Source: Octopus sinensis
Lineage: Eukaryota
Assembly (NCBI RefSeq): GCF_006345805.1
Contig: NC_043014.1
Coordinates: 53,382,001-53,446,000, forward strand
Length of the DNA: 64,000 bases
Direction of reading: 5' to 3'
Part shown: positions 33,501 to 36,500 of the stretch, piece after piece
Numbering within the stretch: position 1 is the first letter of the stretch
How the letters are laid out: the number at the start of each line of letters is the position of its first letter
Notes under the pieces: generated by a model
What the model was told of the DNA's origin: nothing
The model's input: only the letters and a program-made list of their open reading frames with translations
Database searches by the model: none
Position numbers and translations under genes: made by a program

Positions 33501-36500
33501 GGACATGACTCCAATAAGTTAAAAGGGGGTCGATAAAATGGAGTAAAAAAGATGGGACTCCAGCTTGGCCACAAAGTCCCAAACCCATGACCAGCTGAAA
33601 TGGTTGACACTTCCAATTTCCTGTGTCTCTCCCTCGTATTCTGCTGTTGAAAAATCCTCTCCTTGTTCCAATTTAATAAAGTCTTTCAGGCAATTATCAG
33701 TTGTGGCACTGAACAATCCAAAGACTCAGTCTTTGGTTATAATTAGATCCACTTTCTCATCAGTTCTTCTTTTTCTTTTGATTTTAGGGTGCCATAGCTA
33801 TTGCTGGGGCCTGCGTCCAGTGGCTGAGAGATAATCTGGGAATTATCAAAGAATCAGCAGAAATTGGTGAGTTGCCACTTCTTTTCACTTTTCTGTTTTC
33901 TCTTTTAGAAATTGGTCAAATGTTGGGATTTAAAACCCATTCATAGAGAAAAAGGGAGACTCTGTATGGCTGCTCAATCTTCTAAAAATGACAACTAATT
34001 CTCCCTCAAATCACTTCCTTTGAAAAAAGTAAAACGTCACATTACTGTCTTGGATTTCATAAAGTTTGGAACAGTTACAACCGGAAAAGCATAATTATTG
34101 AATCTCTCTCATCCCTATTTCTGTAAATGTAGTAAAGCCTGTGCTTTGCTGATGAGGTTCAAATAAGATTGAAACATGTCCAGAGTTGTCTCGTCTACTT
34201 CCCAAAATCATAAAGATAACCTTAATCATTGACTTATTAATTTTTTTTAATGTCTTTCTCCCCACGTAATTATTTCTAATTAATTTACAATACTCCTTGC
34301 ATTGATTATATCAAAACACAGCTTTGTCTAATGGATCTACCTTTGTTTATGAAGCACTGATCCTTATCCTCCTCTTTTATAGAACACCTGGCAAACCAAG
34401 TTGATGGCACCCATGGCTGCTACTTTGTTCCAGCATTCTCAGGGCTTTTCTGTCCCCACTGGAAACCCGATGCTCGTGGGTTAGTAATTAATATTTTACT
34501 TTTCATTGCTTCTAACTCAATCTCCTCTTCTTTTTTTTTTAACTTTAACCCCTTTTTAATACCAAACCGGCTTAAGGCTGCCTCTAATTTTGATACAATC
34601 CTAGTATGATCCCCTAATACTGGTCCCTTAATTCTGACTGCCATTTTCCCCTTTGGGTTAGTCCCCATTACTCCGTAAGGGGCCTAGAACTGGTCTCCTG
34701 GTTTCTCTGATGTATTTGTTCCTCCCTGGTCAGGATTCCTCCCTGGTCACTAGGTCCCTTATTTTTGCCAGCAGAGTGGACTGCAGCAACATGAAATGGA
34801 GTATCTTGCTCAAGAGCACAACTCCTGGTCCAGTCCAGGAATCCAAACCACAACCTTATGGTCAAGAGTGCAACACCCTTAGCCCCTAAAGCCACCTGCT
34901 CCCAGTTGTATTCATCTTGGCTTGACCCTATTCCTGCCAAACTGCTTGACCCTGAGCCTGTCGTACAGAACTTTTCATTTTAAAATCTCCATATTTAAAT
35001 TGAAACTTTCCATTGTTTAAAAATCTTTTGCTCTCTTCCAAACACCAATAAAGTTATTTCCAAATTCTGAATTATTTTCAAAATTAACTGAAGCCTAATT
35101 AGCCGTGTAATGGTCCATTTAGAAAAATAATAAAAAAAAAACGAGCACAAAAGTAGTTGAGTCCCATCATCGAATTGGTTTTGTGTTTCCATAGTGATTG
35201 AGCATTGTCTAATTAAAATGAAGGGTGAGGTGAGTGTCAGGAATCTGGGATGTTAACAACAGCTTTGGCCACAGCAGACAGGCTTTCCATTTGATTTGGA
35301 ATTGGTCGGTCTGGGAGAGAATTCAAAATTGCTACTCTCAGTGCTTGCATTAAAACAAAACCTTTTGGTTAGTCGTGAGGTGTGGACAACAAGAGAAACC
35401 CTAACAGATGTTAGGCATCGCTTGCTGCTATGACTGACAGAGCACTGTCTTGCCCTCATTGAGGGCAGCATGCAAATTGCTCACTCTTCAGCTTGTTGTG
35501 TGGTTGCTAGAAATAGCAAGTCAAATCTCCCTCAAATACTATTGGCAGGATCACCAATGTGGTTGTTGTTATTTAATCCCAGGTTCACCTCCAATCAAAG
35601 GCATCCTTAATTCCAGTTTCTTATTGTCATGTGTTGTGTTAGCTCTCTTGTGGGTTTTGAACTCCTGAACTTGTGTCACCAAGGTAGATTGGGTTCTATG
35701 GCCCTTCTCCCTTACACTGGTGGTATATCTGTTAGGAGCAAAAGTTTTTCGTTTGGATCCTCACGGTGATAGGGATAACTGTGAGGATACTGAGGGAGCT
35801 TCTAGATGAGTGTTTGATTTGCTAGAAATAACAGCCAAGTCTCCCTGAAATTACATTCTGCCATCTTAGGTAAACAACTGAGACTGGCATACCTTTGACC
35901 ACAGGTCAGCTGAAGCAGTGTTGACCGGGGGGGGGGGGGTCAAGCCACATATTGGTTAAGGAATGAAGCTAAGACATTATCAGAAAAAGTAGTTCTGAAG
36001 TGGGAAGGAGAGAAAAGTTCTTCAAAAGAAGAAATTTGTTTGGTTTTTATTTTTTGGTAAAAAGAGGAAGGACAGAGGGCTGAAGTGTAAAATGGGGGTG
36101 GGGTAAGAGTGACCCCAAAAGGTCAACATTGAGATTTAGTGATAAAAACTTGGTGGGGTGTCGCTGATCAGCTTCTTTTTATTTACTAGTTTTTCAGTCT
36201 GGCCAAGCTGGGGCACTGCCTTCAAGGGTATAATCGATTACATCAACTTCAGTACTTGTCCTTCTTTTATCAATGTTGCAAGGATGAAAGTTAAAGTCAG
36301 CCTAAGCGGAAATCAGTCGCANNNNNNNNNNNNNNNNNNNNNNNNNNNNNNNNNNNNNNNNNNNNNNNNNNNNNNNNNNNNNNNNNNNNNNNNNNNNNNN
36401 NNNNNNNNNNNNNNNNNNNNNATGTATACATACATGTATGTATGTATGTATACATACAGTATGTATGTATATAATACTGTATGCTGTATATACACATACA

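What the first reader, a model, noticed from the sequence alone, without database searches (positions are those of the whole stretch)
34144..34185. Sense-strand minimal hammerhead ribozyme inside GK intron 12
All catalytic core elements are present in type I order: CUGAUGA, helix II, GAAA, palindromic mini helix III (ACAUGU) and a GUC triplet (predicted cut after 34180). Helix I is CUUUG/CAGAG. Minimal type I hammerheads with palindromic helix III are known from Penelope-like elements and can act as dimers. The upstream sequence reads RKSIIIESL, resembling a GIY-YIG C-terminus (weak). Helix II is weakened: the conserved G10.1-C11.1 pair is G-U, as expected from CpG decay. If residual activity exists it would cut the GK pre-mRNA 200 nt upstream of exon 13.
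Basis: partly seen in the sequence, partly recalled or inferred. Interest (0 to 1): 0.72.

Follow-up and report, generated by a model that had tools for sequence, protein, structure and literature searches.

The report
Decayed hammerhead ribozyme relic in octopus intron
The hammerhead-like motif is really there, but it is a mutated, almost certainly inactive leftover of an old mobile-element repeat that once carried a self-cleaving ribozyme, sitting in an intron of the octopus glycerol kinase gene, which is an ordinary kind of genomic fossil.

Summary
The motif at 34144-34185 (+) exists exactly as described: CUUUG / CUGAUGA / GGUUCAAAUAAGAUU / GAAA / CAUGU / C / CAGAG. It lies in sense in intron 12 (33867-34382) of glycerol kinase, 203 nt before exon 13. 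The window is Octopus sinensis.

Alone it is not significant. Rfam Hammerhead_1 gives 15.2 bits against a threshold of 34, about 0.04 such hits expected per window, so over a thousand per genome.

It is not chance, though. It sits inside a copy of at least 245 nt of a dispersed repeat. I found four paralogous loci in roughly 115 kb of octopus DNA, including window 63163-63388. Across copies helix II covaries (GGUU/GAC[C], GGUC/GACC, GGCC/GGC[C]). The 11.1-12 dinucleotide is UG in two loci and CA in two, the two decay products of one CpG. The ancestor was therefore probably a canonical type I hammerhead.

The intron copy is shared by O. sinensis, O. vulgaris and O. bimaculoides and evolves neutrally. 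Helix II is unstable (+3.1 kcal/mol), helix III needs a dimer, and GK holds no second copy.

Verdict: an inactive relic of a Penelope-like or retrozyme-type element. The GIY-YIG reading is unsupported. Low interest.

The parts
34144..34185 (+). Hammerhead-like type I motif: helix I 5' strand 34144-34148, CUGAUGA 34149-34155, helix II and loop 34156-34170, G12-A14 34171-34173, palindromic helix III ACAUGU 34174-34179, C17 34180 (predicted cut after it), helix I 3' strand 34181-34185
   Evidence: Sequence. Only descriptor match in the window. Rfam Hammerhead_1 15.2 bits, below GA 34. Pair table.
34091..34335 (+). Copy of a dispersed repeat of at least 245 nt that carries the hammerhead-like motif and fills about half of intron 12
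   Evidence: Local alignment to 63163-63388 scores 113, against 33 +/- 3.7 (max 46) for shuffles. nhmmer profile hits. Orthologous copies in O. vulgaris (L003 41624-41872) and O. bimaculoides (L001 23150-23413).
63163..63388 (+). Paralogous copy of the same repeat. Its hammerhead-like part is 63215-63256: AUUUA CUGAUGA GGUUUUAAUAAGACC AAA ACAUGU C UAGAG. Helix II is intact (G10.1-C11.1, up to 6 bp) but G12 is mutated to A.
   Evidence: blastn 83% over 47 nt, E=6e-8. Sequence. Alignments. CM R1 74 bits. No Rfam hammerhead hit, even at E<=10.
33867..34382 (+). Glycerol kinase intron 12 (GT at 33867, AG at 34381-34382, phase 1), which hosts the repeat copy
   Evidence: tblastn of glycerol kinase proteins. 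Splice sites read from sequence.
33788..33866 (+). Glycerol kinase exon 12 (..[26 protein letters not shown]; 5' boundary approximate)
34383..34479 (+). Glycerol kinase exon 13 ([33 protein letters not shown])

Best explanation
The motif is the mutated remnant of a type I hammerhead ribozyme. It arrived in glycerol kinase intron 12 as part of an interspersed repeat of at least 245 nt. That repeat was most likely a truncated Penelope-like element end (pLTR) or a non-autonomous derivative of one (a metazoan 'retrozyme').

In the active element, the ribozyme would have processed the element's own multimeric or read-through transcripts. It would have worked as a dimer, because helix III is only a 6-nt palindrome. 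The insertion happened before O. bimaculoides split from the O. sinensis/O. vulgaris lineage.

Since then the copy has drifted neutrally. The C11.1-G12 CpG decayed to UG, and helix II lost further pairs independently in different species. Today the RNA almost certainly does not cleave and has no role in GK expression. It is spliced out with the intron.

Shown: the motif, the repeat family, the orthologues, neutral divergence, and the unfavourable energetics. Inferred: that the ancestor was catalytically active, and that the element belongs to the PLE/retrozyme lineage.
For: 1. Repeat family. There are four paralogous loci in about 115 kb of non-redundant octopus DNA:
- GK intron 12.
- Window 63163-63388.
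- L004 3683-3643 (-), which corresponds to O. vulgaris L003 4270-4205 (-).
- L005 1043-1084 (+) in O. bimaculoides.
They were found by blastn, nhmmer and a covariance model.

2. The inferred ancestor is a canonical hammerhead.
- The core is intact in the GK copy.
- Helix II reads GGUU/GAC[C], GGUC/GACC and GGCC/GGC[C] in different copies. That is U-A to C-G at 10.3-11.3 and U.G to C-G at 10.4-11.4.
- Pair 2.1-1.1 is G-C in GK and A-U in the 63k copy.
- In the named register 90.7% of cells pair, against at most 52% when the partners are slid.

3. CpG decay. The 11.1-12 dinucleotide is UG, UG, CA, CA in the four loci. CpG observed/expected in the window is 0.39.

4. Age. The copy is present in the orthologous intron of O. 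vulgaris and O. bimaculoides, and not detectable in Argonauta. Paralog JC distance is about 0.56, against about 0.27 between O. sinensis and O. bimaculoides orthologues in the same alignment.

5. Neutral evolution. Against O. bimaculoides, 22% of non-exonic 44-nt windows are at least as conserved as the motif. Against O. vulgaris the figure is 82%. The three lineage-specific substitutions are C11.2>U, G10.2>C and A1.4>G. Two of them damage helix II.

6. Energetics. Forced helix II is +3.1 kcal/mol in O. sinensis. The hammerhead fold is +1.1 against an MFE of -6.5. In a 91-nt context both core strands pair elsewhere.

7. Literature.
- Type I HHRs with short palindromic helix III that act as dimers are typical of metazoan PLEs and retrozymes. 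Most occur as solitary, truncated, highly variable copies (PMC4209133, PMC7229834).
- PLEs expanded in Octopus about 56 My ago, before the vulgaris/bimaculoides split (PMC13282606).
- 235 Rfam Hammerhead_1 loci were reported in the giant squid (PMC6962438).
Against: - No copy reaches any Rfam hammerhead threshold.
- With only 5 distinct sequences, the covariation is not statistically distinguishable from shuffles (190/500).
- No RT or GIY-YIG coding remnant was found next to any copy, and no tandem arrangement. Assignment to PLE or retrozyme therefore rests on the ribozyme type and the literature, not on a direct link.
- The two CA copies also share U at position 1.1. They may descend from a master that already had G12>A, which would mean the element spread without an active ribozyme.
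- Even the CpG-restored GK-type helix II is weak (-1.0 kcal/mol).
- Only about 360 kb of cephalopod DNA could be searched. No intact copy was seen.
Confidence: 0.8

Rival explanations
1. Chance resemblance. The repeat family is real, but it never encoded a ribozyme. An AT-rich repeat simply happens to contain CUGAUGA...GAAA...GUC with short flanking complementarity.
For: - Rfam scores of 13-15 bits are far below threshold, and about 0.04 such hits are expected per 64-kb window.
- Fold z-scores are unremarkable (-0.42 and -1.2).
- Covariation is not significant with 5 sequences.
- Three of the four paralogous loci have core mutations.
- Over a whole repeat library, a loose match somewhere is not unlikely (my extrapolation).
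Against: - The differences between paralogs in helix II are compensated rather than random: GGUU/GAC[C], GGUC/GACC, GGCC/GGC[C]. So is 2.1-1.1, which is G-C or A-U.
- The UG/CA split at 11.1-12 restores exactly the conserved G10.1-C11.1 pair and G12.
- Loop 2 (CAAAUA) and the palindromic helix III match the Rfam type I consensus (GUCC CAAAUA GGAC; ACG..CGU) at positions the descriptor did not ask for.
- Matches as good as this one occurred 0-0.003 times per shuffled window.
Confidence: 0.13
2. Functional intronic ribozyme. The motif still self-cleaves, perhaps weakly or as an intermolecular dimer. It would then modulate GK pre-mRNA processing, like the conserved intronic hammerheads of amniotes.
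For: - The core nucleotides, GUC site and helix I are intact in all three Octopus species.
- The motif lies in sense orientation.
- O. vulgaris retains a helix II of G.U, G-C, U-A, U.G.
Against: - Conservation does not exceed neutral background.
- Substitutions hit helix II pairs without compensation.
- Helix II is +3.1 kcal/mol and the hammerhead fold is 7.6 kcal/mol worse than the MFE.
- Helix III (2 bp closing a 2-nt loop) cannot form in a monomer, and no second copy lies in the GK transcription unit.
- Related min-HHRs show little or no cleavage as single motifs even when intact (PMC4209133).
- The same repeat occurs at unrelated loci.
Confidence: 0.04
3. The conserved block is a different functional element, such as an intronic splicing or transcriptional regulator or a small RNA precursor, and the hammerhead likeness is incidental.
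For: The block at 34147-34186 is locally better conserved against O. bimaculoides (1 difference per 20 nt) than the 40 nt just upstream.
Against: - Equally conserved stretches are common in this and other introns (22% of windows).
- The upstream 'divergence' is an indel.
- No Rfam family fits.
- The same sequence is a dispersed repeat.
Confidence: 0.03

Closest known systems
Canonical metazoan type I hammerheads of non-LTR retrozymes and satellite-like repeats (Rfam RF00163 Hammerhead_1; newt satellite 2, Schistosoma Sm-alpha, coral, mussel and axolotl retrozymes; PMC7229834)
   Same: - Type I topology.
- Helix I of 5-6 bp and helix II of 4 bp with no bulge after A9.
- Helix III of 2 bp plus a 2-nt palindromic centre, which implies action as a dimer.
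- Loop 2 CAAAUA identical to the Rfam consensus.
- AT-rich host repeat of a few hundred nt.
   Different: - The copies here are solitary, not tandem.
- All sampled copies are decayed and score 13-15 bits or nothing in Rfam.
- No loop 1 / loop 2 tertiary-contact partner is evident.
- circRNA expression is untested.
Minimal hammerheads (min-HHR) in the pLTRs of Penelope-like elements (Cervera and de la Pena 2014, PMC4209133)
   Same: - Dispersed, mostly solitary and truncated copies with high sequence variability.
- Palindromic 15.2-16.2 and loop 3, and a short helix I.
- One locus (L005 851-958 (-) next to 1031-1175 (+)) shows the head-to-head inverted arrangement described for PLE insertions (PMC8557442).
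- PLEs are abundant and old in Octopus (PMC13282606, PMC8967140).
   Different: - No RT or GIY-YIG ORF lies next to any copy.
- The characteristic unpaired nucleotide between A9 and 10.1 is absent.
- Helix II is 4 bp (6 bp in one copy), not 6-8 bp.
Conserved intronic hammerheads of amniotes (HH9, HH10; Rfam RF02275, RF02277). [quoted passage not shown]
   Same: A sense-strand type I hammerhead inside an intron of a protein-coding gene, thought to derive from retroelements.
   Different: - Those are ultraconserved and cleave efficiently.
- This one scores 13.4-14.5 bits against a GA of 52.
- It evolves neutrally and has a broken helix II.

Membership tests
Hammerhead ribozyme, type I (Rfam RF00163) | Conserved core C3-U4-G5-A6-N7-G8-A9 ... 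G12-A13-A14, with A15.1-U16.1 and H17, in type I order | tested here: met
   CUGAUGA at 34149-34155, GAA at 34171-34173, A15.1 at 34174, U16.1 at 34179, C17 at 34180.
Hammerhead ribozyme, type I (Rfam RF00163) | Stable helix II closed by the G10.1-C11.1 pair | tested here: not met
   G.U, G.U, U-A, U.G, with a forced hairpin at +3.1 kcal/mol. Met only in the inferred ancestor and in the paralogs at 63227-63241 and L005 1055-1069.
Hammerhead ribozyme, type I (Rfam RF00163) | Score at or above the curated gathering threshold (34 bits) | tested here: not met
   15.2 bits. No gathering-level hit in the window.
Hammerhead ribozyme, type I (Rfam RF00163) | Self-cleavage 3' of H17 | not testable with these tools
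   Needs in vitro transcription or mapping of RNA ends.
PLE min-HHR (PMC4209133) | Located in a pLTR flanking an RT plus GIY-YIG ORF, or traceable to one | tested here: not met
   No Pfam hit in three frames upstream of either window copy. No GIY-YIG pattern in the held loci. No long ORF in the 4.1-kb segment around the L004 copy. Traceability to a full element could not be tested without genome-wide data.
PLE min-HHR (PMC4209133) | Unpaired nucleotide between A9 and 10.1, and a long helix II (6-8 bp) | tested here: not met
   Pairing starts directly after A9. Helix II is 4 bp in three loci and 6 bp in the 63k copy.
PLE min-HHR (PMC4209133) | Palindromic 15.2-16.2 / loop 3 (dimer-competent helix III) | tested here: met
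   ACAUGU in the GK and 63k copies.
Metazoan non-LTR retrozyme (PMC7229834) | Canonical type I HHR (helix I about 6 bp, helix II 4 bp, helix III 1-2 bp with a small palindromic loop) | tested here: inconclusive
   Met by the inferred ancestor but not by any present copy.
Metazoan non-LTR retrozyme (PMC7229834) | Head-to-tail tandem repeats of about 150-450 bp | tested here: not met
   TRF finds no such array. 5' against 3' self-alignment is not above shuffles (34/300 and 172/300). All four loci are solitary.
Metazoan non-LTR retrozyme (PMC7229834) | Low GC (<45-50%) and expression as small linear or circular RNAs | tested here: inconclusive
   GC is 0.31-0.43 for the 65-nt segments. Expression is not testable here.
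Conserved intronic hammerheads (HH9/HH10) | Sequence conservation above neutral, and a family-model hit | tested here: not met
   HH9 scores 13.4 and 14.5 bits against a GA of 52. Conservation is at background level.

The most novel reading that the evidence does not exclude
The repeat could be an undescribed, very abundant Octopus retrozyme or PLE-derived family. Four loci in about 115 kb would extrapolate to 10^4-10^5 copies. Its younger members might keep an active type I hammerhead. Sense-oriented intronic copies with an intact core, such as this one (best preserved in O. vulgaris), might retain weak, dimer- or factor-dependent self-cleavage that nicks host pre-mRNAs such as GK.
Probability: 0.04. 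Interest if true: 0.55.

Novelty: new member of a known kind. Interest (0 to 1): 0.2.

Why it matters
It matters little for glycerol kinase biology, because the relic is spliced out and shows no constraint.

It has modest value for people who study mobile elements and ribozymes.
- It points to an old hammerhead-bearing repeat family in Octopus. That family is invisible to Rfam thresholds because every sampled copy has lost the C11.1-G12 CpG.
- The library search for 'hammerhead ribozyme' with 'octopus' returned no paper describing such a family. The O. vulgaris repeat-annotation paper I checked contains neither 'ribozyme' nor 'hammerhead'.

It is also a clean example of method. A sub-threshold ribozyme match can be validated or dismissed by looking for paralogous copies, and CpG decay can be used to reconstruct a dead catalytic core.

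Tried and rejected
- GIY-YIG or RT remnant upstream. Pfam scan of all three frames of 33869-34150 and 62300-63260 at E<=10 gave nothing. A regex for GIY..YIG in all held loci gave nothing.
- More-than-unit or tandem structure of the copy. The 3' end of the unit looked by eye like a second half-hammerhead. Self-alignments were not above shuffles, and TRF found nothing. Rejected.
- The 4.1-kb O. sinensis segment holding the 'up' copy, which is absent from O. bimaculoides, as a full-length Penelope-like element. It has no long ORFs and is a composite of SINE-like and simple repeats. Rejected.
- Getting more octopus DNA through a TE protein. A search with the CR1-like ORF at 37258-38004 returned almost only short ENA contigs and one Argonauta protein, so it was of no use for sampling Octopus genomes. 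Cluster members of the GK protein did work.
- Metagenome scan for the family pattern TGATGAGGN{3,4}AATNAGNNNNAAACNTGTCNANAGTT: 0 matches.
- tRNA-like SINE head. ARAGORN finds nothing in the window.
- Rfam on the paralogs and orthologues. There is no hammerhead hit for the 63k or 'up' copies, and HH9 scores 14.5 bits for O. vulgaris.
- Covariance model R1, built from the copies, run with filters off on the window and with default filters on all loci. It found no further convincing copies.
- Reconstructing the downstream oxidase-like protein to fetch orthologues of the 63k copy. Abandoned because the gene appears to run off the window end.
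Full report
**Observation.** The sequence at 34144-34185 (+) reads CUUUG CUGAUGA GGUUCAAAUAAGAUU GAA ACAUGU C CAGAG. That is every element of a type I hammerhead in the right order.
- Helix I has 5 bp, one of them a wobble.
- The CUGAUGA box is intact.
- Helix II has 4 pairs, three of them G.U wobbles.
- G12-A14 is present.
- Helix III is a 6-nt palindrome.
- The cleavage triplet is GUC, with C17 at 34180.

The coordinates and the description are correct.

**Gene context.** tblastn with glycerol kinase sequences places 13 coding exons on the + strand. 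Intron 12 is 33867-34382 and exon 13 is 34383-34479, so the predicted cut site lies 203 nt upstream of exon 13.

The organism is an octopus.
- The assembled exons are 95% identical to O. bimaculoides glycerol kinase.
- The window is 100% identical to the O. sinensis chromosome record fetched as L004.
- It is 96% identical to O. vulgaris (L003) and about 83% identical to O. bimaculoides (L001/L005).

**Is the motif more than chance?** Taken alone, no.
- Rfam finds nothing in the window at gathering thresholds.
- Permissive scans give Hammerhead_1 15.2 bits (threshold 34) and HH9 13.4 bits (threshold 52).
- The E-value of 0.36 for 131 nt against 4227 families corresponds to about 0.04 expected hits of this one family per 64-kb window.
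- A descriptor of my own finds only this site in the window. It finds 0.03-0.05 sites per Markov-shuffled window, and 0-0.003 that are as good.
- Extrapolated to a genome of about 2.7 Gb, that is hundreds to thousands of chance matches.
- The 42-mer does not fold better than shuffles (z = -0.42). In a 91-nt context the minimum-energy fold pairs the helix I strand and the CUGAUGAG box with other partners.

**What it is.** A blastn of intron 12 against the window found a second locus at 63216-63262 with 83% identity across exactly the hammerhead-like segment.

Local alignment extends the homology to 34091-34335 against 63163-63388. The score is 113, against 33 +/- 3.7 for shuffles. About half of intron 12 is therefore a copy of a dispersed repeat of at least 245 nt.

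A profile HMM and a covariance model built from the copies found two more loci:
- One is on the minus strand 6.3 kb upstream of GK in O. sinensis and O. vulgaris (L004 3683-3643).
- One is in O. bimaculoides 9 kb upstream of GK, inside the range of a neighbouring UCH-domain gene (L005 1043-1084).

No further copies turned up in the roughly 360 kb of cephalopod DNA I could fetch.

**Comparing the copies.**
- Helix II reads GGUU/GAUU in O. sinensis GK, GGUU/GACU in O. vulgaris GK, and GCUU/GACU in O. bimaculoides GK.
- It reads GGUU/GACC in the 63k copy, GGUC/GACC in the UCH copy, and GGCC/GGCU in the upstream copy.
- Between paralogs the changes are compensated: U-A to C-G at 10.3-11.3 and U.G to C-G at 10.4-11.4.
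- Pair 2.1-1.1 is G-C in GK and A-U in the 63k copy.
- The dinucleotide formed by C11.1 and G12 is UG in two loci and CA in the other two. These are the two deamination products of a single CpG, in a window whose CpG observed/expected ratio is 0.39.

Restoring that CpG restores both the conserved G10.1-C11.1 pair and the catalytic G12. The inferred ancestor is CUUUG CUGAUGA GG(U/C)(U/C)-loop-G(A/G)CC GAAA CAUGUC CAGAG, a canonical type I hammerhead.

Loop 2 (CAAAUA) and the palindromic helix III also match the Rfam type I consensus, at positions my descriptor did not require.

One caveat applies. With five distinct sequences, the formal covariation test is not significant (190 of 500 shuffles reach the observed score). 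The register control is clear, however: 90.7% of cells pair, against at most 52% when partners are slid.

**State of the intron copy.** It is present in the orthologous intron of all three Octopus species. It is not detectable in Argonauta, whose intron 12 is filled with G-rich tandem repeats.

The three lineage-specific substitutions in the motif are C11.2>U (O. sinensis), G10.2>C (O. bimaculoides) and A1.4>G (O. vulgaris). Two of them weaken or break helix II, and neither is compensated.

The motif is no better conserved than neutral sequence. 22% of non-exonic 44-nt windows are at least as conserved against O. bimaculoides, and 82% against O. vulgaris.

Energetically:
- Helix II costs +3.1 kcal/mol in O. 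sinensis.
- The hammerhead fold (helices I and II) is +1.1 kcal/mol, against -6.5 for the MFE.

Helix III (2 bp around a 2-nt centre) cannot form in a monomer, so a second copy is needed. None lies in the GK transcription unit. Published min-HHRs of this kind show no detectable cleavage as single motifs even when intact (PMC4209133). Present-day activity is therefore very unlikely.

**Comparison with what is known.** Metazoan genomes carry thousands of type I hammerheads. They have a short palindromic helix III, they act as dimers, and they belong to Penelope-like elements (in their pLTRs) or to their non-autonomous derivatives, the non-LTR retrozymes. Most are solitary, truncated and highly variable (PMC4209133, PMC7229834, PMC8557442, bioRxiv 10.64898/2026.07.22.740005).

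Cephalopods have old, abundant Penelope-like elements. In O. vulgaris an expansion is dated to about 56 My ago, before the split from O. bimaculoides (PMC13282606, PMC8967140). The giant squid genome annotation lists 235 Hammerhead_1 loci (PMC6962438).

The age of the family here fits. Paralog JC distance is about 0.56, against about 0.27 for the O. sinensis/O. bimaculoides orthologues in the same alignment.

Architecturally the inferred ancestor looks more like the canonical type I form of retrozymes (4-bp helix II, no bulge after A9) than the PLE min-HHR. But the copies are solitary rather than tandem.

One locus has a head-to-head inverted partial copy, as described for PLE insertions. No RT or GIY-YIG remnant is adjacent to any copy.

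I therefore file it as a relic of a PLE/retrozyme-type hammerhead-bearing element. The family assignment is inferred, not shown.

The GIY-YIG hint is unsupported. There is no covariance-model support at curated thresholds, and the evidence is against any residual function.

**Verdict.** This is a real feature of a well-known kind: a dead hammerhead carried by an old retroelement fragment in an intron. Interest is low. The only mildly new element is the existence of this apparently common, Rfam-invisible family in Octopus.

Noticed in passing
window 34480-40562 (N run at 36322-36421); L003 about 57000-90400; L006: The glycerol kinase exons for residues about 379-517 are missing from the window between exon 13 and the last exon (40563-40667). 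The gap coincides with a 100-N assembly gap flanked by TA/CA-rich simple repeats. In O. vulgaris the corresponding interval is about 50 kb, with a simple-repeat array of more than 30 kb. In O. sinensis at least part of the missing coding sequence sits on a 12-kb unplaced contig. NCBI accordingly has two partial models, XP_036366498.1 (426 aa) and XP_029654153.1 (77 aa). This is an assembly artefact, not a truncated gene.
   Followed up: partly
L005 851-958 (-) next to L005 1031-1175 (+): In O. bimaculoides the fourth copy of the repeat has a 5'-truncated partial copy in inverted, head-to-head orientation 72 nt upstream. This is the arrangement described for Penelope-like element insertions (PMC8557442).
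   Followed up: partly
L004 280-4373 (2.1-6.2 kb upstream of the window start): About 4.1 kb is present in O. sinensis (part of it confirmed in O. vulgaris) and absent from O. bimaculoides between L005 3986 and 3990. It contains the minus-strand hammerhead-like copy, SINE-like sequence and microsatellites, and has no long ORF.
   Followed up: partly
window 9576-9866, 12289-12519, 20629-20880, 43566-43870, 59372-59557 (and others): A repeat of about 300 nt recurs many times in the window and in O. bimaculoides (L001 13278-13591 and 22460-22752). It is probably one of the abundant octopus SINE families.
   Followed up: no
window 37258-38004 (+): An intact 249-aa ORF resembles the C-terminal part of LINE reverse-transcriptase proteins. 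Its relatives carry PF00078, and the best named hit is an Argonauta hians hypothetical protein at 64% identity. The ORF itself has no Pfam hit.
   Followed up: partly
window 48073-48297 (+): A fragment of an LTR-retrotransposon RNase H domain (PF17917, E=1.6e-6).
   Followed up: no
window about 51407-61180 (+), probably running past the window end: A multi-exon gene downstream of GK has an N-terminal FAD/NAD-binding GGGISG motif and weak, sub-threshold Amino_oxidase (PF01593) similarity. By eye it looks like protoporphyrinogen oxidase. The second hammerhead-like copy (63215-63256) lies downstream of its last recognised exon, in the same orientation.
   Followed up: partly
L002 28131-28884: Intron 12 of Argonauta hians glycerol kinase is filled with a G-rich tandem repeat (GGTTGGTTATGGGTGGGGGG-like units) and cannot be aligned to the Octopus intron.
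   Followed up: no
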